From Ramazzottius varieornatus (lineage: Eukaryota > Animalia > Tardigrada): a DNA stretch of 64,000 nucleotides. The position numbers and the translations under genes are program-made. Positions 4,479 through 17,927 of the stretch are shown piece after piece. The notes under the pieces were generated by a model, which searched no databases, was not told where the DNA came from, and saw only the letters and a list, made by a program, of their open reading frames with translations. The stretch is from assembly GCA_001949185.1 (NCBI GenBank), contig BDGG01000005.1, forward strand, positions 744,001 to 808,000, in the 5' to 3' direction. How positions within the stretch are numbered: position 1 is the first letter of the stretch; the number at the start of each line of letters is the position of its first letter.

Positions 4479-5120
4479 ATGCCAGGTACCGGAGGAAAGC
4501 AGAAGGAAAAAGCACCGAAGGAGGGACAAGCTCAAGACGAGGACGATACGCCAGGCCATTTCACTGTAGCCCAGACGAAGTAAGAAACCGATCTACGAAC
4601 TTGTTATCAACTGATGCTTATGACTGGTCACCCGTTTCTAAATGCGGATTCTGCTTGTCGGTGTCTGATCCACGTTGATCTGCGTGAGCTTAACGACGAG
4701 TTCGTCCGATGTACCTCCAAGATAAGTTATTGGCGACAGGTACGGGACGTCCTGATCGAAATATTTCCTAACCTCAAGAGGACTCCAGCACAAGTTTGAA
4801 AAAACTGGCGCAATCTGGACAAGACCTACAGAAAGAAGGAGAAAAGTAAAACAGGTCTAGGTGCGCAGACATGGCCTTACTTTCACTTGATCGACGCAGA
4901 AAGACGCGATCGAGCAGATATCACACTTGACGGAATGTCAAACATTGGTGGTACGTGTGCTTCTGCTGAAATTTACGTTTGGGTGATTCTTTTGGTTGAA
5001 CCATCACTTTACGATGTAAATGTTGATGACTGTGTGTAGGTGAGAACAACGCCACGGCTCTGTCAGACTTCACCGGTGATCTGCACGCAGGGACAATGAC
5101 ATGGATGATCCAGAAGTAGT
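4479..5120 (+). pseudogene. Harbinger Myb/SANT-like (trihelix) DNA-binding protein, disrupted
   Basis: YWRQVRDVL...KRTPAQV*KNWRNLDKTYRK...WPYFHLID trihelix signature, with an in-frame TGA at 4797-4799. The 3' end is approximate. Confidence 0.8.
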
Positions 5121-5149
5121 CTGGCCAATTGATTGTGACGATGCAGTAT

Positions 5150-6019
5150 TCTCGCAAATGAGCGAATATTCTCGCATCGTGGACTTGGCCAGGTGTGCCA
5201 GTCGACACATGTAGAAAACGACCAGAATTTGAAAATGCATCATACAGTATTTAACTGCGTATGAATATCACGAGCGGAAAGAAAATACTTACTGTTCAGG
5301 ATCAGCAAGAGCTTGCATCACAACGCTGTAGGTATGATGGCGGTTTACGTACTCGTCACGCCTTTTCTCCGGAGCTGGACAGTAAACGTGACGGCCATCC
5401 ACCGCCCCAAAAACACGGACACTTCCGCGAACCGACGAAATTTTTCCATTGTTTCGAGCACCATCAGGTCCAGCTGAACTGCTGGAGGCTCCTTTACAAC
5501 ATCTGGATAGGCGTGCTTCACGGCCGAGACAAAACGTCTCACGTACTTGAAAGCTGTTGACTTCCCATTGCCAAACACCCCAATACACTTACTTTAGGAA
5601 GTACCCTTGGTTAAGTAATGCAGGTCACGAGCAACCTGAAGCTCCAGTGGGTGCTCTGGACGTCCTAAAAGGGAATCTCTCGTAGGCTGTAGATACGGCT
5701 TAAGACCTCGTAGTAGCTTCGCGAATGTCGAACGCTGCACTCCGAAAAATTTCTTCAGATCATCGTCGTCGTCACGGTAAAGCTCCCAGAAGGCGTGTCT
5801 CTGTTGTGCGCGGACCTTGTAGAATGGTGGTTGACGATTCAATGACGAGAGCAGCGACGAAGCAGTGGCGCAATTACGAATAACATTGCAGATCAGTTCG
5901 GCTACAGCTGACATCTGGCCTTCCGTGAGAACGGTTATCTGGTCGACTTCCGGTGGACGTTGGGGAGCTGCCGTAACGGCGATGTTAACGGCCAAGAGTT
6001 GGTTGGACAAAAGATCCAT
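5150..6019 (-). pseudogene. Harbinger (HARBI1-like) DDE transposase, disrupted and truncated
   Basis: FFGVQRSTFAKLL, FGNGKSTA, GAVDGRHVYCPAP...YVNRHHTYSVVMQA and PGQVHDARIF motifs. In-frame TAA at 5594-5596 and a frameshift near 5410. The downstream GDxxY and Glu catalytic segments were not found. Confidence 0.85.
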
Positions 6020-7041
6020 AGTTCGTTCGAAAAGCTAGCGAACACGGGAAAAAAGGCAAGTACTCGGTGATCGATAGACCATGGAAAACTGCCATGAGAA
6101 GAGCGGGGTAGAGGTCAACCAGCATATTTATGCTAGTTAAGCGGGTAGGCTCTTTTCAATGGGATGTGGTTGATAACTTGAGTTGTCAACTCAAGTTGTT
6201 CATAAAGCAACCACGGTTAACAACTACATTGGGTTGCAGCGGGTTGACCATAACGTATGGACTTCGTAAATGCATTGCGGTTGATTTTCGTTGACCTGGG
6301 TTGGGTTAATGAAGAGTGGCTTTGTGAACGCCAGTTCATCATAATATTATGGTCGACCAGGGTTGATAACCACTTACGGAACGCAGCCTTAGACTAACTA
6401 CTCTGAACACGTAGCTCGGCCTGACATAGTAGCCGTCTTATCGAATGAAATGGATTAGCTGACCTGCTTTGCGTGCCAACGAAATTCTGTCTATTAATAT
6501 AGAGAATGCGAGCGAAAGCGCACTAGCACAATTCGACACGCACAGGAATATCGTGATATCATAGGAACAAGTTCGTCTCGTAGGCTCTGTGTTAAAAGAG
6601 TCACGCAATGTATGATGTCACGATGGTCCTGTGCGTATCGAATTGTGCTAGTGCATTTTCGCTCGCAATCTATATAATATTTACGAATCTCTGGTATGCT
6701 TTGGCGTGTTTCCTTTATGTAGCGGCAAATTTGGCACAAAATTTTCCCCTTCCGCCCTGACGAGTGACGACAGGTTTAACGGAGAAGCGAAGTCGTTTTT
6801 GTTGGATTAACCAGAGTATCACTCTGGATTAACTCTTACATATCTTGTGTTTCGCAGGTATTCTAGGTAGGATCGACCGCTGCGCTGCGTCGATCCAGAC
6901 TGGAAGTACAGGATAACTCCACCAACAGCAAGCAGCGAGCGACGAAGTGGAAGCATTCTGCTGATTCGTATTCTCCTAAGACTGTCCTTCTGAGCAAGTA
7001 GCGGTTCTTGTTAGCAGACAACAGTAAACTCAGCCTCACTG

Positions 7042-7991
7042 ATGAATTTATTGCAAGACTCGGTGGGGGAGTTCAGTGTGAAAGCAACGACTTCAGCCGA
7101 CCTCTTCGTTGGATGCTTAGGTAAGTCTTACTTCCAGTGAGATGATGTTATGCAGTCTGATAAGCCGGGCTCATGCTGACGGTCTCTCGGCTGTCGTCCG
7201 CAGTACACCGTTTTTAATCAAGGCTCGTTGTTACAGAAAACGTTATTCACTACATCCTGATGAAGCGTCAGGTCTATCCACGCGACAAGTTTCAAGACAT
7301 CCAAAAGTCCGGGATGAATATGGTTCTCCTCTCCGATACTTTCCCGTCCGAATACATCACCAAAATGTTACGCGCAGCTCGAGGTAAACGTCTGTTGATG
7401 CTTTATGAGTACTTCACTTATCTCCGTCGGTCACTATATACTTCTTCTGCAGATTACCTGGACCGCGGCGAGCTCGACCGGGTGGTTCTGTGCATAATTG
7501 GAATAGCGTCGGGGGAAGTTATGGAACGATGGCAGTTCAGCGTTGATCGCTCGGAAGTTCCCAAGGAAAGTACCGAGTAAGTTCGTCGCAAGACTGCAGT
7601 CTAGTACTCCTCGTATCTGAACAGATCGAAGTGCTGAAAAATCATGTTGCTTGTTGCTTGTAGGAATCCTGAAGTGGTTAACCAGGTCTACAACGAGACA
7701 GCTCAGTTCATCAAGCAAATAGGCGTTTCCTTCATGCCTCCTTTAGACTGTTACTGTTCCTTCAAAATTTTGCTATACGTGGCCAAAGCTGCAAGTCAAC
7801 CTGACGAGAACTGGGAGAACTCTCATCCCCATTACGTCGACGAGAAAATGGAGGCGTCTTTGGACCTACGGCCGGTAAATGTTCCCCATCACAAGCTCCA
7901 AGCTGTCGTCGTCTACAAGAATACCGACATGTCTTTCGTATCTTTTGCTTCCTCTCAATCTCAGTCGTATGCATCTGCCTCATCCAATTAG
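7042..7991 (+). CDS. Mad2-like HORMA-domain protein (4 coding exons, divergent)
   Basis: ILMKRQVYP..F, SGEVMERWQFSV, CSFKILLY, WENSHPHYV and HKLQAVVVYK align with MAD2L1 motifs. Confidence 0.8.
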
Positions 7992-10342: not shown

Positions 10343-10833
10343 GGCGATCCTCAGGATACGTTCAACTGAAAGTAAAACAGTCCACTAGAGAAGAGTGAAT
10401 TGCGGGTTTGCGATTCCAGAAAGGCGGAGACGGTTGCTGGCCACACCCTAAGCGACTACTACGTACGTTTGATTTAATCGCCAGCTTGATTTACGCACTG
10501 GCTACGATCCCAATTATTTTCCGAACGTCCGGGGTCGTCCGCAACCGGAAGTGACTTTGTATTTCTGTAATTCTGTTTGCTCAAGTTCCTGTTGGCGTCG
10601 CTGTGCACTGTGGACACGTAGCTACCTGAGCAACGTCCTCCTCGTTCACCAAATGCTGAGGTCCTAAGGTGAGCCGCGGATCTAAGATCAAGTTTGCTAG
10701 TGTACTGTAAACTTGTGGCCCTCGTTCTTGAGTTAACTTCTGCGTATACTCTCTTTCGAGGGTGCTTGATTTGGGTTCTGGTTTTAGAGGCTCGCCGGAA
10801 GTTCAGACCACGCGGAAACGCGGGAGTTTCACG
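10343..10833. promoter_or_regulatory. Probable bidirectional promoter between UAP56 and SOSS-B
   Basis: Divergent ATGs about 490 bp apart, each with an apparent 5'-UTR intron. An ETS-type CCGGAAGT sits near 10545. Confidence 0.4.
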
Positions 10834-11370
10834 ATGAGTGAGATAATCCTTACCGCATTAAAAGACTTCAAACCGAGTTCCAAGAATATAAACTTCATTA
10901 CGATGGTCTTGGAGCCAATTGGTGTGTTGCACCAGACCCGGGAAGGGGAACAAGTCAGGACGTTTAAAGTGGCCGACAAGACAGGATCCATCAACTTGTG
11001 CATCTTTGGAGAAATGGGTGGTTACTTGAAACCGGGCGACATCATTCGCGTCAGAGGTTATGCTTCTCTTTTCAAAGGTTCCTTGACTGCTTACGTAGGC
11101 AAGACTGGAGAGATTAGGCGTGTTGGCGAGTTTTGTTTGCCCATCTCTGAGGTCCCCAACATGTCCGAAATGAACCTTTTCCCACCACTTCCGGTCCACG
11201 TTCAAGGCCAGGGACCGGAAAGGGCAGCTCCGCCCAACGGGGGCAACTTCCACCAGCAACACAGTGCGAACTTGATGCTAGCAGCTGCCGTAGAGCCTCG
11301 TGTGGCTCACTTTCCACAGCCTGATCAAGGAGGACTTCCATCTCAGATAAACAAATTTGGTACACGGTAG
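10834..11370 (+). CDS. NABP: SOSS complex subunit B / OB-fold ssDNA-binding protein (NABP1/2-like)
   Basis: KDFKP..KNINF, VRTFKVADKTGSINL, LKPGDIIR, GYASLFKG and VGEFCL..SEVPNMSE. The true ATG is at 10834. Confidence 0.93.
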   Translation: MSEIILTALKDFKPSSKNINFITMVLEPIGVLHQTREGEQVRTFKVADKTGSINLCIFGEMGGYLKPGDIIRVRGYASLFKGSLTAYVGKTGEIRRVGEFCLPISEVPNMSEMNLFPPLPVHVQGQGPERAAPPNGGNFHQQHSANLMLAAAVEPRVAHFPQPDQGGLPSQINKFGTR

Positions 11371-11666
11371 AACAGGCAAGAAGTCAAGTGCTTTCTTCAG
11401 CTCGCTTTGCATACTACTCTGATTGAAATCTGCTCACAAAACAGAATCCTGAGAGGCCTTCAAGACAGTGGGATTTTTCTGGAATCTCGTTTTTACGGAA
11501 TTTCTTTACTGATTTTCGGTTTTATATATTTCAGAGCTTGCCTTTACAGTAGTACCTTCTTTTGTTTCTCTTCAGTTGGATCTCTTTATCGGATCCGACA
11601 GTGGGGTGAATTTCATGCAAGAAAGGAAATATGGACAGTGGCGTGAGGTAAATCACTAAAACATTC

Positions 11667-14600
11667 CTAGGAGATTAGAAGGACTTGTAGGTCCATGGCG
11701 TTGGTTCCAGTCAAGCCCGTGAACAGCAAAGACCCAAGAGACCGACAAGTAGAAAAGAAAGCATACGAATCATTGTTTCCCAAGGACTTGTTAGCGTGAC
11801 CAAAATCTTCCGCTCTCGCGGAGGAGAAAGGAAAGTTAATTTGAGCGCCGGCGGCATCCGTGTTGTCTTGACCGTCCGTTCCACAGCTGGCGAAGCTTCC
11901 ACGAAGGTTCTTCAGACTTTCGCTTAACTCACCACTCAGTCCATACAGCTCCATTGCGAAAGCTAGAGCCATTTCCTGATTTCGACCACCCTTTCCGTGT
12001 CCGGTCACAGTTACCGTAGTCTCTCCTCCAGCCACGATACAAACAGGCAGATTCCAGTCGATCACAGGCGACAAAATTCCGTCCGATGGAAAGTAGGAGA
12101 AGCTAGGTTGTTCAGTCGTTAGACCCGAGCGGTAGGCAGCGACGTTCTTGACGATCAAAGCGAAATCCTTTGCTGCATCTCGGCAGTTCCCCTGAAGCCG
12201 GTTGGTCAGAATGACAGCTTGGTACCCTAACTGAATGGCTGTCCGCTTACAGACATTCAAGGCCAGTGTGTTGTTTCCGACCAGAATGTTGTTGCCTAAT
12301 GTCGAAGGAAGGGTACTCGGAGCGGAGTCGTCGCGTGAAAGGACTTCACGGACGTTTTCAGGAGCCGAATCCCACACTCCATAGGCCTTCACTATTTCAA
12401 CAGCATCGAGGTTCCTGGAATTTCCGGGTACAGTGGGCCCACCTCCGATGAGTTCTAATGGGTCTCCGATTATATCGGACAGGATCAACGAAGCCCACAT
12501 GACCTCACTGGAGATATGTTGGGCCAGATGTCCGCCTTTGATTTGCGACAACCGCCCGCGAACCACGTTGAGGTCCTGAATCGGCGCGCCTCTTGATGCT
12601 AGGGTCTTCGTCATCCACAGCTTTTCTTGGAGAGTTACTGGAGGAACTGGTGCACAGAGTAATGCAGAAGCTCCTCCGGATATCACGCATAGTAAGATAA
12701 CCGGATGTTGGACCTTCGAGACGAACTCGATGGCGGCTTTCGAGCTGCGTATGGAATCTTCGTTTGGTAAGTTGTTCCTTCCGGCGAAGAGTACCAGAAC
12801 GTTACATTCCTTCAGATGTGCCAGCCTGTAAAATAAGAAATAAACTAACAAACAATCTACACTGTTGGAGTTATTACGGTACTCGGACCGGTCAGAGTTC
12901 TCAGCTTGGGCTGCCGCTTCCGTAGGAATGATGAGTAGACCATCCTTCACGTGGTCCTTCAGTACGCCATACACAGATTCAAACATCCCCAGGGCTGCTT
13001 TACCAGCTCCAAGTAAACATACATTCCCGTTCACCTTTTGTGCGAACTTTTCCTCTCCACTGAAGTCGTATATTCGAACGGTAGAGTCCGAATCGACAAC
13101 CACGTGCTTCTTGATGAGAGCTTCCGGCTTGACTGCTTCTATCCCAGCAGTAACGATGTTCAAAGCAGCGGCTTGTGTACTAATGACGCGACATCGAAGT
13201 CTTTCACGATACTCCAAGGAACCATCGGTGTCCTTATGACAAAGTGCATCCGCAAACGACATAAGCGGAAAATTCTCTCGGGTTCTCTCGATCATTTTAC
13301 CCTTCGTGATTGAATGGACGATTCGCAGACTTTCAAGGAACGACTGGCCGGGGTACTTACATACTGGAAAGAATCTCACTGTCCAGAGCGACACGTTACC
13401 TTTGTGCTCGGAAGGCAGAACCTCATCAAAGTCTGTAAGGAACGACGAGAAGGCGCTGCCGAAGATCCTCAGCAGCGCCACGTTATTCCGAGGTACTTCC
13501 GCCTTGATATCATCTGCAATTCCGCAAAAGACCGTCACGAACAGGCGTTGACCGTTCACCGACACGACGACCGTATGCATTAGGGTTCCACAAGGCACGA
13601 TGAGTTTTTCGTCAGTGGTCCATGACCCTCCGGACTCGTTGCTGCAGTTACTGAGCAGGCAGTAAGCTTCGACCTGTAACGGTTGGAGAAAGCAACAGTA
13701 CTCCAGGACAGACTGCGGTGAGATGGAGCTCTTCTCATTAACTATGGAATGCATAGTGGTTGTATTGATGCCGAGAGATGCCTGAAGTTGTCGATCGTCG
13801 ACTAAGGCATCCAAGTACTCCCGCATAGTGCCGAGATGGATGAAGCGGGACTGCGGTAGGAAAAGTACTTGGATGGGAACGTCGTGAAGAGTGTCGAACA
13901 GAGCCCTCCGGACAGACCTCATCTTCTGATCTTTGGTCTTCTCGATGTATTTCTCATCAGCATCTGTTCAACAAAAAGACGTTAGAATCCCAACCCGCAA
14001 TTCCATATCCATCGAATATAATGATGGAATAAAATATCACTTTGGATTAGTTTAGTCTGAGTTGGTGGTTACAAACCTTTTCCGAGGGGGCGCATGAAGT
14101 CTCCGTAGCAGTCAACTTCCACTTCCGGTACGCCATATTTCCGGTAGAATCCGAATAGCTTCTCAGCCACGTTCATGTCCATCCAGTAAGCACTGTCGCT
14201 TATCACGCAAGGTTCCGAACGGGCAGAATCCTCACCGCCGGGTTCGCTGCTTACATCCAGCACAGCTCCTCCTTCTTTCATCTCTTCGATAGATGGCTTT
14301 TGGAAAACCTTAGAGCAGGAAAGAAATGCTGGCTCCTGGTTCGTCACGCTCCTCTCGCACACGAAGACTCCATGGGTCGTGCCGATGTGTAAGCTGGAAG
14401 GATGCCCCAGGGCGACGAAGCCCGAAGCGGAAGTTAGATGAGCGGGTGGTGGAGAGTCTAGCACGAAGAGCTCGAGGTCGTCGGACGCCGTAACAAAGAT
14501 TCCAGGCTGCATCAGCGGAATGAAAGGCAAGTACATGGAGAGCTTCAAATCCAACATATCCCAGTCACCGCCAAACCCTGCAGCGTGAAAAACGAACCGT

Positions 14601-17600
14601 AGAACCATTGCTGGCTCAGCTGGAGAATATGCACTGTAACACGTACCGACCGGAAGTGGCATAAACAGCTTGCCCAACACGGAAGCTGACGGCAGACGTT
14701 GACTCCATCCTCCCGCGTGGATCAGCAGGACCTTTTTCGTTTTCAGGTCCGTTTCCAGAAAGCGTCTGTGCAGTTCTTCGAGTACCAGAAAGGTAGATCC
14801 ACCAGCTCCTGTAAGCATATAAGCAGCCTCTCAAAAGAATCCCGCCCTCCCGTATTCATCATGACTATTTGGTACTGTATCTGCCTTGCTTAAGGTGTTC
14901 GGTACATACCGATCTTGCATCTGGGGAAGGGACCCTTGTCAACAACGACAACATAATAGGCACTGGGAACTTCGTGGTGCTTTTTTTTCAGGTCGATTTG
15001 AATCTGGAATGCGCGACCTTGCTCGGCATCGCAAGCTGTCAGTACTACGATGTCCCAGAAAGCATCCTTGGTCCCTTTCAAAGTAAGAGCCGTCGAATCT
15101 GCATACAAAAACAAAATGACACTTATGACTTTATGGTGAGATAACACTGGTGAGATAAACAGACGGAGAAAAGTTTTTTTGGGATATCGGCGAATGACTT
15201 TCACATGATCGCTTCCATAAGCGGCGCACATTTCAGCCAGTAATAATGGAAACGTGCGCCACTTGAGATGGCGATCATGCTCAATTCATTTGCCGACATC
15301 CAATCTATACGAACTTCCGGATGAATTACGCACTAGACGAAACACCAACTTTGTTTTCTTTTTATCCATCAACTAAAATACATTTCGACGTGAAAACCAC
15401 ATCTCGACCCTCGAGACGATGACCAAGAACTGAGTACACCAGCGTACAGTACGCTATGGCAAGAGAAGTTTGAGAGGAAGAGCCAAGACCCAAAAGACTA
15501 CTCAAGTTCACGATCCAGATCAGCGGCCATCTGCCCAAGAGTATCATCGTCATCACTAAACAGATGCTCATCAGGACTCGAACTCGTTGAGCTAATACTG
15601 AACTGGTCAGACTTCAAATGCGTGCTAAACTCATCTTCGTCACTACCATCCTCTCCGAATGCCTCATCCAGCTTCCTCTTCAATGACACAACTTGCACCT
15701 CTTCAGCTTCTTCGCACCCTTCATGAACATTATCCTTGTCTAGGTTCGAGTCCGACGCTTCGGGAAACTCTTCCTCATCATCGTCATTCCCACCCATGGC
15801 TTCATCGATCTCATCTTCCATGTCTTGCAAATCCTTGTCGGAAATCGCTTGGAGGTACGAAGGCTGTCCCTCTTCCGCGGTATCTTGCGAGGTTGAAGGC
15901 ACACTTTCACTGCTCGGGACATTTCTTTTGGGAAAAGTGGTGCTCGGTGGAATAAACTTTCCTCCTTCCTTCAAAGGATACAGCCTTTCATCGACCCGTT
16001 CCCATCTTCTGATACACTCGGTTAACCATTCAGGCGAAACCACGAAGATGTTCCCTGCTTTTCTCGCTTGTGTAACTTTCACCGTACCGTCTTTGCTTGC
16101 AATCAAGTGCGTGGTTCTGTTAGCTTCGATCTTTTCGCTCAACACCAAATCATCATCGACGTTCGCCCCGAAAGACTTCGCCAACGCAAACGCCTTCTCC
16201 TTCTCATCTGACTTCACATCGTGAGGAAAAAGCCCGGTGAAAACCAAGTTACAGTCCTTCAAGACCTTCTTGCGAACGTAGGGGACGATGTTTTTCAAGT
16301 CCGGAAAGTCAGGCGATGAGGGAAGAACCTTCTTTCCTTGGGTTTCGTTCTCGTCGTAGATTCTGTAAAAAGCACTGTGAATTGTTAACAGAGCTTGTTT
16401 GAGGTACAGAAGGTAATCGTCAGCTTCGTCTTCCCCTTCATCAGCGAAACGCGACTGGTACTGGTTCCTGACTGCCTCGGAAGACTTTGCTTCCTTGTTC
16501 TTTGTTGAATCGGCTGTGGTCTCTTCGCTTGATTGACCATTGATTTCTTTGGTTGATTGAGCTGCTTTCTCATCGTCGGCTGATCGGCCTGATTTCACTT
16601 CCGGCGAAATCCCGTTGGCTTTTTCCGTGCTTTCTTTCAGACTTTCCTTGACTGAATTCTTCCTTGGAGGAGCGTTGATGTCGCCGACGTTCTTGAAGTA
16701 GTGATAAGGTTTAACATGAAGGAGATTTGGAGCATAGTTCCACACGTCGTCACGATCGTCGATGATACAAACCATTTGGTCACCAACAGGGAAGATCGCC
16801 TTCATATTCGCACTCTTCAAGTCCGCTTCCAAATGTTCGTCTCTCGAGAGGATCCGATGCGAGAACAACGATCCATCCGGATCGATTATCTTGGCGATGT
16901 GATGAGCGTACAGCCGCGTACCCAGAGTGAAGATGTGCAGCTCGAAGCTCTTCTTCAGATCTTTGAGGAAGTCCAGCAAGCCAGGACGCAGCTTTGTATG
17001 ATACCACGGATATCTCTTTCCAGGACGAAACTGGAAATGGTGGATATCGGTGCGTTGATTACTGACATTTTCCATCGTCGTGTGGATGATAGTCTGATCC
17101 AGATCGACGATCAGGACTAATCTTCGCGATTTCAGTAGCTTGGTTAGATCATCTTGCCCAAGACGAGAAGCGTGCTCGTTGCTAACGATCAACTCGGGAA
17201 TATTGTGGACGACAGGGACCGCAGCTGTGATGGTCGAGTGTCGTGCTCCAGGAACACCGTTCAGTCGAAGATCAGCTCCGCAATGAGCGCACATGTCTTT
17301 CATGACGATGGAATGCGGGCAGCCTTTCTTCATCCGGAAGAGCGGAGTTCCGTCCTGAACTGTATCGCCTTCTCTAACGAGGATGTCAAGGACGCTGCCC
17401 ATGAACTTCGCACGTAGACGAACGTCTGGTCCATCAAAGAGAATGAGAACCTGGTCTTTGCGAACCACTTCGTTCTTTTGGACTTTCAATCTGATGACTC
17501 TTGCTTCTGGGCTTCCGGTGAAAGAAACTGTCTCCAAGTCGTCGTCCATTCCTTCCAACTTGAGACAGGATAAATATCGACGGACTTTACTGTCGGGATC

Positions 17601-17927
17601 AGTATCCTGAATGAACTAACAAACCAAGAGGTATATCATATCACTAGAAGAATTAGACTAGCATCCTAAGATTTGTAACACATCTGTGAAAGCAGCCTGG
17701 ACACCCCGTCACATAACAGGCTGTCACAGCCATCCCTGAGCCACTTCCATCAACTCATACAGTCCAAGTCATTAGTCGTTACTGCTATGTATGGTTATGA
17801 TGCCATCGAGAAGATCCTAGTTTCCAAGTTAGCAAATTCATCCACACTTACCTCTAAGCTTCTGGTAACGATCGAGAAGATCCCGCATGAAGTTGACAGT
17901 GCTGCTCATGTTCTCCGTGCTGCTCAT
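11667..17927 (-). CDS. Fusion of fucose-1-phosphate guanylyltransferase (FPGT) and glycerate kinase (GLYCTK/MOFRL)
   Basis: Exon 1 (17927-17852, MSSTENMSSTVNFMRDLLDRYQKLR, GTAAGT donor) splices in phase to 15098. FPGT motifs: FWDIVVLTA, KIGAGGST, LLIHAGGWSQRLPSASVLGKLF, DCYGDFM, FIHLGT. The frame continues without a stop into GAGKAA, ISGGASAL, KGG, SDIIGD, GGETTV, GGRNQE, GTDGQD and TGTNAMD. Confidence 0.88.
15181..15301. mobile_element. MITE family A copy (FPGT intron 1, downstream of FCP1)
   Basis: GGATATCGGCGAATGA...AAGCGGCGCAC...GTGCGCCACTTGAG...TCATTTGCCGACATCC. Confidence 0.75.
15498..17549 (-). CDS. CTDP1: RNA polymerase II CTD phosphatase FCP1 (intronless CDS, nested in FPGT intron 1)
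   Basis: CPHSIVMKDMCAHCG, catalytic motif LIVDLDQTIIH, KLRPG, IIDDRDDVW, BRCT domain (WLTEC..RWERVDE) and an acidic tail. ATG at 17549. Confidence 0.96.
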   Translation of the reverse strand: MDDDLETVSFTGSPEARVIRLKVQKNEVVRKDQVLILFDGPDVRLRAKFMGSVLDILVREGDTVQDGTPLFRMKKGCPHSIVMKDMCAHCGADLRLNGVPGARHSTITAAVPVVHNIPELIVSNEHASRLGQDDLTKLLKSRRLVLIVDLDQTIIHTTMENVSNQRTDIHHFQFRPGKRYPWYHTKLRPGLLDFLKDLKKSFELHIFTLGTRLYAHHIAKIIDPDGSLFSHRILSRDEHLEADLKSANMKAIFPVGDQMVCIIDDRDDVWNYAPNLLHVKPYHYFKNVGDINAPPRKNSVKESLKESTEKANGISPEVKSGRSADDEKAAQSTKEINGQSSEETTADSTKNKEAKSSEAVRNQYQSRFADEGEDEADDYLLYLKQALLTIHSAFYRIYDENETQGKKVLPSSPDFPDLKNIVPYVRKKVLKDCNLVFTGLFPHDVKSDEKEKAFALAKSFGANVDDDLVLSEKIEANRTTHLIASKDGTVKVTQARKAGNIFVVSPEWLTECIRRWERVDERLYPLKEGGKFIPPSTTFPKRNVPSSESVPSTSQDTAEEGQPSYLQAISDKDLQDMEDEIDEAMGGNDDDEEEFPEASDSNLDKDNVHEGCEEAEEVQVVSLKRKLDEAFGEDGSDEDEFSTHLKSDQFSISSTSSSPDEHLFSDDDDTLGQMAADLDRELE

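What the first reader, a model, noticed from the sequence alone, without database searches (positions are those of the whole stretch)
11667..15098. In-frame fusion of fucose-1-phosphate guanylyltransferase to a MOFRL glycerate kinase
Seen: one exon carries the FPGT C-terminus (..HKDTDGSLEYRERL) directly into the first helix of a glycerate kinase (..AALNIVTAGIEAVKP) near 13185. There is no stop, linker or Met at the junction, and both halves retain their signature motifs. Established: the known bifunctional fucose-salvage enzymes (Bacteroides Fkp, plant FKGP) pair this domain with a GHMP-family fucokinase, and vertebrate FPGT and GLYCTK are separate genes. Inference: either the MOFRL domain has been recruited as a non-orthologous sugar kinase feeding GDP-fucose synthesis, or this is a lineage-specific fusion of two housekeeping enzymes. 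I do not know of a description of this architecture.
Basis: partly seen in the sequence, partly recalled or inferred. Interest (0 to 1): 0.85.

Follow-up and report, generated by a model that had tools for sequence, protein, structure and literature searches.

The report
Tardigrade FPGT–glycerate kinase fusion gene
In the tardigrade Ramazzottius varieornatus, and in at least two other tardigrade genera, the GDP-fucose salvage enzyme FPGT and the animal glycerate kinase are encoded as one transcribed 1053-residue protein; this is a real lineage-specific fusion that I found described nowhere, and nothing suggests a new fucose kinase.

Summary
One exon (window 13963-12889, minus strand) runs without a stop, Met or linker from the last helix of a fucose-1-phosphate guanylyltransferase (FPGT) into the first helix of a DUF4147+MOFRL glycerate kinase.

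- **Transcription:** spliced RNA contigs from four separate studies cross the junction unbroken.
- **Gene model:** six exons, each an exact piece of the GenBank protein RvY_10085-1 (Ramazzottius varieornatus, 1053 aa). The true first exon lies at 17927-17852, upstream of an FCP1-like gene that sits inside intron 1.
- **Conservation:** the same tight junction occurs in Hypsibius exemplaris (OQV18528.1), Paramacrobiotus metropolitanus (XP_055346633.1) and an unnamed fourth lineage. An exhaustive HMMER search of 1.84 billion representatives showed no fused protein from any other named organism.
- **Origin:** the nearest named stand-alone relatives of both halves are animal proteins, and both halves keep nearly all family-conserved residues. 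This gene is the genome's only FPGT and only MOFRL kinase.
- **Fucokinase:** a separate fucokinase-like locus (pyrophosphorylase-type tail plus GHMP kinase) lies on another contig, so the "replacement fucokinase" idea is not supported.

Best reading: an old, tardigrade-specific bifunctional fusion of two housekeeping enzymes, with its functional logic unknown. It is already in sequence databases under automatic names. I found no paper describing it. Interest is moderate.

The parts
17852..17927 (-). Exon 1 (coding part): ATG at 17927-17925, encodes MSSTENMSSTVNFMRDLLDRYQKLR plus 1 base; GT donor at 17851-17850
   Evidence: The 28 loose letters at 15100 in all four runs map to one place in the genome, window 17852-17875. 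Sequence read. The translation equals P0001 residues 1-25.
15099..17851 (-). Intron 1 (2753 nt); contains a complete FCP1/CTDP1-like open frame (15498-17558) on the same strand
   Evidence: GT..AG ends confirmed.
14910..15098 (-). Exon 2: FPGT N-terminus (FWDIVVLTACDAEQ...)
   Evidence: RNA contigs; exact substring of P0001 from residue 27.
14647..14808 (-). Exon 3: FPGT, holds the LLIHAGGWSQRLP motif
14077..14577 (-). Exon 4: FPGT central part (GHPSSLHIGTTHGVFV, YGDFMRPLG)
12889..13963 (-). Exon 5: FPGT C-terminal half, the fusion junction, and the first ~95 residues of the glycerate kinase
   Evidence: One continuous piece in contigs of four runs; Pfam; exact substring of P0001 from residue 311.
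13170..13190 (-). Fusion junction: ...RCRVIST|QAAALN... (P0001 residues ~570-575)
   Evidence: AF2 model: helix 555-569, a two-residue break, then helix 572-586.
12826..12888 (-). Intron 5: 63 nt, in frame, without a stop; spliced out in all four runs
11667..12825 (-). Exon 6 (coding part, including the stop at 11667-11669): rest of DUF4147 plus the MOFRL domain (GGETTV, GKGGRNQE, GTDGQD, TGTNAMD)

Best explanation
This is one protein-coding gene of the tardigrade Ramazzottius varieornatus (RvY_10085-1). It has six exons and encodes 1053 residues.

- **Residues 1 to about 572** are an orthologue of animal fucose-1-phosphate guanylyltransferase (GTP + beta-L-fucose 1-phosphate -> GDP-L-fucose + PPi).
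- **Residues about 573 to 1053** are an orthologue of the animal class-II (DUF4147/MOFRL) D-glycerate kinase GLYCTK (ATP + D-glycerate -> phosphoglycerate).

The kinase half has lost its own start codon and N-terminal extension. It is joined within about two residues to the last FPGT helix.

The fusion most likely arose once, in an ancestor of the parachelan eutardigrades (Ramazzottius, Hypsibius, Paramacrobiotus). It has been kept since then because it is the only copy of both enzymes.

Most likely the two halves work as independent catalytic modules on one cytosolic polypeptide and are co-expressed from one promoter.

Shown: the fused reading frame, its transcription and splicing, its conservation among tardigrades, the animal descent of both halves, and the retention of conserved residues.

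Inferred: both activities, the cytosolic location, and the absence of substrate channelling.
For: - **Open frame and domains:**
- **Transcription:** spliced contigs from four studies cross the junction with no variant, indel or loose end there.
- **Gene model:** all six exons are exact substrings of P0001.
- **Fused orthologues:** H. exemplaris OQV18528.1 (1116 aa, 48% identity, all three Pfam domains) and P. metropolitanus XP_055346633.1 (1025 aa). An unnamed Logan fragment, P0172, also spans the junction. In the alignment the junction sits at the same place, within 3 residues.
- **Even divergence:** the two halves diverge alike between species (FPGT 50-52%, GK 46-50% identity).
- **Conserved columns:** R. 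varieornatus keeps 45 of 46 columns that are at least 90% conserved in 66 stand-alone FPGTs, and 65 of 74 such columns from 73 stand-alone glycerate kinases.
- **Solved structures:** the kinase half aligns over residues 577-1052 with glycerate kinases 1x3l and 2b8n. The FPGT half matches B. fragilis FKP, 5yys.
- **Nearest stand-alone relatives:** named animal GLYCTK (sea urchin, Strigamia, Tachypleus, Centruroides) and named animal FPGT (Tubulanus, Lingula).
- **Tree:** in a quick maximum-likelihood tree the three tardigrade kinase halves form one group (SH-aLRT 98). They lie outside the bacterial clade (SH-aLRT 100).
- **Single copy:** the genome has only one DUF4147 locus and one MOFRL locus. 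Its only full FPGT is this gene.
- **Pathway context:** a separate fucokinase-like locus exists on contig C12. GDP-mannose dehydratase-family and O-fucosyltransferase matches are also present.
Against: - No enzyme activity has been measured, and no peptide or single long read across the junction was available. Contigs show continuity of sequence, not of single molecules.
- Three positions that are at least 90% conserved in other glycerate kinases are changed in all three tardigrades: G658E, G720A in SGGGSAL, and S796G. Some shift in kinase properties therefore cannot be excluded.
- Long conservation of a very tight junction could mean the link is functional rather than neutral.
- P. metropolitanus has a predicted FPGT-only isoform (561 aa) that ends 6 residues into the kinase. 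This hints that the two activities are sometimes uncoupled.
- The AF2 model is of modest quality (pLDDT 72.9, pTM 0.51, 11-sequence alignment). It says nothing reliable about contacts between the domains.
Confidence: 0.8

Rival explanations
1. The MOFRL domain has been recruited as a non-orthologous sugar kinase. It would make fucose 1-phosphate (or another sugar 1-phosphate) for the attached pyrophosphorylase, giving a functional analogue of Fkp/FKGP.
For: The known bifunctional salvage enzymes join this pyrophosphorylase domain to a kinase (PDB 5yys; the FKGP-like P0209). The junction is tight and conserved. Three otherwise conserved kinase positions are changed in all tardigrades.
Against: - A separate fucokinase-like locus is present: a PF07959 tail of 43-45 bits plus GHMP_kinases_N of 39 bits on the same strand. 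These parts lie in the same order as in a bifunctional FKGP-like protein.
- The kinase half is the genome's only GLYCTK orthologue. It keeps GKA, GGETTV, GGRNQE, GTDGxD..AAGA, ND and TGTNxMD.
- MOFRL kinases phosphorylate a hydroxy-acid, not an anomeric sugar hydroxyl (established knowledge of the family).
Confidence: 0.04
2. The fusion is a true 'Rosetta stone'. The two activities would be coupled in tardigrade metabolism, through a shared pathway, a shared regulator or a complex. One example would be supplying a GDP-sugar and a phosphoglycerate to one downstream process.
For: The fusion has been kept, with the same very short junction, in lineages that are only about 45-52% identical. No unfused copy exists in R. 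varieornatus.
Against: - No known pathway links fucose 1-phosphate guanylylation with D-glycerate phosphorylation.
- The one concrete idea I could test was a GDP-sugar plus phosphoglycerate leading to a glycosyl-glycerate solute. It found no mannosyl-3-phosphoglycerate synthase (PF09488) in the genome.
- A sole-copy fusion is hard to undo, so conservation alone does not show coupling.
- The fusion appeared nowhere outside tardigrades.
Confidence: 0.1
3. The fusion is not a real single protein. It would be an assembly or annotation chimera, or one transcript that yields two proteins through internal initiation or cleavage.
For: Contigs cannot prove single molecules. P. metropolitanus has a predicted FPGT-only isoform.
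Against: - Four independent RNA data sets give the same continuous sequence without variants.
- Three independently assembled genomes predict the same fusion.
- The first Met after the junction lies inside the essential GKAALGM motif, so there is no place for a separate kinase start.
- There is no stop or frameshift.
Confidence: 0.04

Closest known systems
Animal fucose-1-phosphate guanylyltransferase (FPGT; Pfam PF07959 Fucose_pyrophosphorylase, EC 2.7.7.30)
   Same: The N-terminal ~570 residues cover the whole family profile. They are 37-39% identical to named FPGTs of Tubulanus and Lingula, and keep 45 of 46 family-conserved columns.
   Different: The protein carries a complete glycerate kinase at its C-terminus instead of ending after the last helix. 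In R. varieornatus its first intron also houses another gene.
Animal D-glycerate kinase GLYCTK (class II, DUF4147 + MOFRL; solved relatives 1x3l PH0495 and 2b8n TM1585)
   Same: The C-terminal ~480 residues align end to end with the solved kinases. They are 38-40% identical to sea urchin, centipede and horseshoe crab GLYCTK, and the catalytic motifs are kept.
   Different: - It has no start codon or N-terminal extension of its own.
- It is made only as the tail of FPGT.
- Three tardigrade-wide substitutions sit at otherwise conserved positions (G658E, G720A, S796G).
- R. varieornatus has a one-residue deletion in GTDGxDGPT.
Bifunctional L-fucokinase/GDP-fucose pyrophosphorylase (Bacteroides Fkp, PDB 5yys; plant FKGP)
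   Same: A fucose-1-P pyrophosphorylase domain is fused to a kinase on one chain. Residues 87-243 match FKP at E 1e-7.
   Different: The kinase partner here is a MOFRL glycerate kinase, not a GHMP fucokinase. The two activities are not consecutive steps of any known pathway.
Human FPGT-TNNI3K read-through locus (from my own knowledge, not tested here)
   Same: FPGT is joined to a downstream, functionally unrelated kinase gene.
   Different: The human case is an optional read-through transcript between two intact genes. Here the fusion is fixed in the genome inside one exon and is the only form seen.

Membership tests
FPGT (PF07959 Fucose_pyrophosphorylase, stand-alone animal type) | Pfam domain match above the gathering score across the profile | tested here: met
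   Profile positions 3-197 (166 bits) and 218-417 (122 bits), against a cut-off of 34. Orthologues score about 315 bits.
FPGT (PF07959 Fucose_pyrophosphorylase, stand-alone animal type) | Family-conserved residues (GGxSxRLP, GK, ADD-type loop, HPS..G..HGV, YGDF..LG, F.H.GT..E) | tested here: met
   45 of 46 columns that are at least 90% conserved in 66 stand-alone FPGTs are kept.
FPGT (PF07959 Fucose_pyrophosphorylase, stand-alone animal type) | Nearest relatives are FPGTs rather than fucokinases | tested here: met
   The top stand-alone hits are ~580-620 aa proteins. Two of the five I looked up carry a name, both FPGT (Tubulanus, Lingula).
FPGT (PF07959 Fucose_pyrophosphorylase, stand-alone animal type) | GDP-L-fucose formation from GTP and fucose 1-phosphate | not testable with these tools
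   Needs an enzyme assay.
Class II glycerate kinase (DUF4147 + MOFRL; GLYCTK) | Both Pfam domains, in order, above the gathering scores | tested here: met
   PF13660 at 204 bits (cut-off 23) and PF05161 at 91 bits (cut-off 28.3).
Class II glycerate kinase (DUF4147 + MOFRL; GLYCTK) | Full-length alignment to solved glycerate kinases | tested here: met
   Residues 577-1051 align with residues 11-432 of 1x3l (440 aa, E 1.6e-45). Residues 589-1052 align with residues 16-428 of 2b8n (429 aa).
Class II glycerate kinase (DUF4147 + MOFRL; GLYCTK) | Family-conserved residues | tested here: inconclusive
   65 of 74 columns are kept and all the core motifs are present. However, G658E, G720A and S796G are shared by all three tardigrades. 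Their effect on activity is unknown.
Class II glycerate kinase (DUF4147 + MOFRL; GLYCTK) | Descent from the animal GLYCTK lineage rather than from bacteria | tested here: met
   In a quick ML tree the tardigrades form one group (98) outside the bacterial clade (100). The careful tree search did not finish.
Class II glycerate kinase (DUF4147 + MOFRL; GLYCTK) | ATP-dependent phosphorylation of D-glycerate | not testable with these tools
   Needs an enzyme assay.
Bifunctional fucokinase/pyrophosphorylase (Fkp/FKGP) | GHMP-kinase domain on the same chain as the pyrophosphorylase domain | tested here: not met
   This gene has no GHMP domain. The GHMP_kinases_N match next to a PF07959 tail lies on another contig, C12.

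The most novel reading that the evidence does not exclude
The fixed, very tight FPGT-glycerate kinase fusion of tardigrades may record a real metabolic or regulatory coupling that is unknown elsewhere. One possibility is a tardigrade-specific use of a GDP-sugar together with phosphoglycerate. Another is a kinase half whose substrate has shifted, given the three tardigrade-wide changes at conserved positions. In either case it would be more than a neutral merger of neighbouring genes.
Probability: 0.1. Interest if true: 0.7.

Novelty: new variant of a known kind. Interest (0 to 1): 0.4.

Why it matters
Both enzymes are ordinary, but their permanent union is not known from any other named organism in the databases searched. 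The fusion gives a clean, easily scored molecular character for tardigrade phylogeny: it can be scored as present or absent in Apochela and Heterotardigrada. It is also a natural test of whether gene fusions imply functional links, since here no link is evident. For annotation, the three deposited proteins are named "hypothetical" or simply "FPGT". Tardigrades would therefore look as if they lack glycerate kinase in pathway reconstructions. If the halves turn out to be coupled, that would point to unknown metabolism in an animal group studied for extreme stress tolerance.

Tried and rejected
- **Spliced leader:** the 28 loose letters at the exon-2 acceptor first looked like a trans-spliced leader. 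A genome pattern search found them once, 2.7 kb upstream, as an ordinary first exon. I rejected the spliced-leader idea.
- **Word-indexed protein searches:** searches restricted to the FPGT C-terminal half and to the junction returned only the window's own protein. They missed even the Hypsibius orthologue, so these blanks mean nothing. The whole-ORF search showed only stand-alone kinases besides the window's own protein.
- **ESM Atlas:** it listed only FPGT clusters at scores below significance.
- **Glycosyl-glycerate solute idea:** no PF09488 match in the genome.
- **Large alignments:** joint alignments of fused, FPGT-only and kinase-only sequences were misaligned (A2, A3). I did not use them. 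The structure was predicted from the 11-row A1 only and is of modest quality.
- **Fucokinase locus:** Pfam scans of further open frames around the C12 locus added nothing.
- **Literature:** six searches found no description.
- **Closed or capped tools:** I therefore could not examine the gene structure and neighbours of the Hypsibius, Paramacrobiotus and unnamed loci. Read laying is capped at one call, so I could not test whether the FCP1 mRNA shares exon 1.
- **Earlier findings:** a word search for fucokinase found nothing.
- **Joined model:** the joined spliced model was never typed or searched. Exons were handled by reference, and the identical database protein P0001 was used in its place.


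Full report
**What is in the sequence.**
- On the minus strand, a 751-codon open frame (11667-13922) starts inside a Fucose_pyrophosphorylase domain (PF07959, profile 218-417, 122 bits). It continues without interruption into DUF4147 (PF13660, 204 bits) and MOFRL (PF05161, 91 bits), the two domains of class-II glycerate kinases.
- The next open frame upstream (14069-14818) holds PF07959 profile positions 3-197 (166 bits).
- The junction reads ...KDTDGSLEYRERLRCRVIST|QAAALNIVTAGIEAVKPE... at about 13190-13170.

**Organism.** The assembly has 55.8 Mb in 200 contigs. The window's own protein is deposited as [quoted passage not shown], 1053 aa, with all three Pfam domains (P0001). This is a tardigrade genome.

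**Transcription and gene model.**
- Twenty public runs hold part or all of the stretch.
- I laid the contigs of four runs, from four different studies, on 11300-15700. All four are spliced, with four GT..AG introns on the minus strand: 14909-14809, 14646-14578, 14076-13964 and 12888-12826. They are therefore RNA-derived.
- In every run the piece 12888-13963 is continuous. There are no other letters, indels, joints or loose ends near the junction.
- At 15100 all four runs carry the same 28 extra letters. I first suspected a spliced leader, but the letters occur exactly once in the genome, at window 17852-17875. There they end an ordinary first exon with an ATG at 17927 and a GTAAGT donor.
- The gene thus has six exons: 17927-17852, 15098-14910, 14808-14647, 14577-14077, 13963-12889 and 12825-11667.
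- Translated one by one, each exon is an exact substring of P0001 at consecutive positions. The lengths sum to 3162 nt, which is 1053 codons plus a stop.
- I did not type or search a joined model. P0001 stands for it.
The coding region begins 2.8 kb further upstream than 15098. The long open frame also reads through a 63-nt in-frame intron that is removed in all four runs.

**Is the fusion found elsewhere?**
- An exhaustive HMMER search of 1.84 billion cluster representatives with P0001 gave 10,925 hits.
- The top hit, P0121 (1116 aa, 945 bits, 48% identity, query 6-961 in one stretch), is Hypsibius exemplaris OQV18528.1. It is named only "Fucose-1-phosphate guanylyltransferase" but carries PF07959, PF13660 and PF05161.
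- The cluster of P0123 contains Paramacrobiotus metropolitanus XP_055346633.1, isoform X1 (1025 aa, fused). It also contains isoform X2 (561 aa). X2 is identical to X1 for 559 residues and then ends "GL", six residues into the first kinase helix.
- An unnamed Logan fragment, P0172 (303 aa), also spans the junction (PF07959 tail plus DUF4147 head). It is about equally distant (43-45%) from the three named species.
- P0122 (ENA) is a kinase fragment 72% identical to R. varieornatus.
- All other hits among the best 150 are stand-alone FPGTs, stand-alone glycerate kinases, or fragments of these, plus one Fkp/FKGP-type protein with a GHMP domain (P0209). A fused protein with about 35% identity in both halves would have outscored every single-domain hit, so none appears to exist among the representatives outside tardigrades.
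- In the alignment the junction is at the same place in all four fused sequences, with linker lengths differing by at most three residues. This argues for a single origin.

**Descent and state of the two halves.**
- The nearest stand-alone kinases are named animal GLYCTKs: sea urchin, the centipede Strigamia, the horseshoe crab Tachypleus and the scorpion Centruroides. Three of these were compared directly and are 36-40% identical to the tardigrade kinase halves.
- The nearest named FPGTs are from the nemertean Tubulanus and the brachiopod Lingula, at 37-39%.
- In a quick maximum-likelihood tree of the kinase half, the three tardigrades form one group (SH-aLRT 98). They lie outside a fully supported clade of all named bacterial sequences. 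The careful search did not finish, so this is the quick tree only.
- Between tardigrades the halves diverge alike (FPGT 50-52%, kinase 46-50%).
- Of 46 columns that are at least 90% conserved in 66 stand-alone FPGTs, R. varieornatus keeps 45.
- Of 74 such columns in 73 stand-alone kinases, it keeps 65. These include GKA, SGG.SAL, SD..GDP, GGETTV, GGRNQE, GTDG.D, AAGA, ND and TGTN.MD.
- G658E, G720A and S796G are shared by all three tardigrades.
- The kinase half aligns from its first helix to its last strand with the solved glycerate kinases 1x3l and 2b8n. Residues 87-243 match Bacteroides FKP.
- An AlphaFold2 model from the 11-row alignment is only moderate (pLDDT 72.9, pTM 0.51). It shows helix 555-569, a two-residue low-confidence break, then helix 572-586. 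That is a hinge between two helices with no confident domain packing.

**Genome context of the pathway.**
- The genome has a single DUF4147 locus and a single MOFRL locus, both in this gene.
- Apart from this gene, PF07959 matches only a 50-residue C-terminal piece on contig C12 (43 bits, above the cut-off).
- A GHMP_kinases_N match (39 bits) lies 1.7 kb downstream on the same strand.
- A bifunctional FKGP-like protein aligns to this locus piece by piece in the same order (residues 533-563, 765-799, 803-910 and 955-1016).
- This is the architecture of animal fucokinase (FCSK). However, I could not recover its N-terminal half or check its expression.
- GDP-mannose-dehydratase-family and O-fucosyltransferase matches are also present, so GDP-fucose is in ordinary use.

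**Interpretation.**
- The most economical reading is an old, lineage-specific merger of the animal FPGT and GLYCTK genes. The merger removed the FPGT stop codon and the kinase's own start and N-terminal extension.
- Because the merged gene is the sole copy of both enzymes, both halves stay under purifying selection, and the fusion is hard to undo.
- I put 0.8 on this reading, with both halves acting as independent catalysts.
- The idea that the MOFRL domain replaces a fucokinase gets about 0.04. A fucokinase-like gene exists, the kinase half is the only GLYCTK orthologue and keeps its motifs, and MOFRL chemistry does not fit an anomeric hydroxyl.
- A genuine but unknown coupling of the two activities gets about 0.1. 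My one testable version, feeding a glycosyl-phosphoglycerate synthase, found no such synthase.
- An artefact, or two separately made proteins, gets about 0.04. The first Met after the junction lies inside the essential GKAALGM motif.

**Novelty.**
- No paper in the searchable library mentions this pairing, the locus tag, or tardigrade FPGT or glycerate kinase.
- The proteins are, however, public for three species under automatic names.
- I class it as a new variant of a known kind (bifunctional enzyme fusions), of moderate interest.

**Limits.**
- Read laying allows one call, so transcripts of the nested FCP1 gene and of the C12 fucokinase locus were not examined.

Noticed in passing
window 15498-17558 (-), inside 15099-17851: A complete FCP1/CTDP1-like open frame (686 codons, RNA polymerase II CTD phosphatase type) lies on the same strand inside intron 1 of the FPGT-kinase gene. 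In three runs the FPGT contigs stop exactly 30 letters (28 loose letters plus the ambiguous AG) into exon 1, which equals k-1 if Logan's word length is 31. This suggests a second continuation from the exon-1 donor, either a shared first exon or unspliced RNA. If exon 1 were spliced to the AG just before the FCP1 ATG, its ATG would be out of frame with FCP1.
   Followed up: partly
window 15071-15700 (-): In run X1 one contig runs unspliced from the FCP1 3' end across the exon-2 acceptor at 15100. In the other three runs the depth at 15122-15268 is about zero. This is probably read-through or pre-mRNA.
   Followed up: no
window 12826-12888 and 14578-14646 (-): Two introns (63 and 69 nt) are multiples of three and contain no stop, so naive ORF translation inserts 21 and 23 false residues. 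Introns in this gene are 63-113 nt long, apart from the 2.75-kb intron 1.
   Followed up: yes
window 10762-11370 (+): A gene that looks to me like an OB-fold SOSS-B/NABP type (not tested) converges on the 3' end of the fusion gene. The RNA contigs continue more than 630 letters beyond 11300, so the 3' ends of the two convergent transcripts probably overlap or abut.
   Followed up: no
G000:C12:1413867-1416186 (-) (L007 about 4868-7187): A fucokinase-like locus with many small exons. Only the PF07959 tail, GHMP_kinases_N and some downstream pieces could be recognised. The N-terminal half was not found.
   Followed up: partly
G000:C1:5881427-5882341 (-) versus G000:C3:1087263-1088578 (+): There are two strong GDP_Man_Dehyd-family loci. 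One is a single uninterrupted 352-codon frame covering the whole profile (230 bits). The other is split into at least five exons. The intronless copy could be a retrogene, a transfer, or a different dehydratase of the same family.
   Followed up: no
P0123 / P0271 (Paramacrobiotus metropolitanus): The predicted isoform X2 is an FPGT-only protein. It shares 559 residues with the fused isoform and ends 'GL' six residues into the kinase. This implies an intron at that point in Paramacrobiotus, where R. varieornatus has none.
   Followed up: partly
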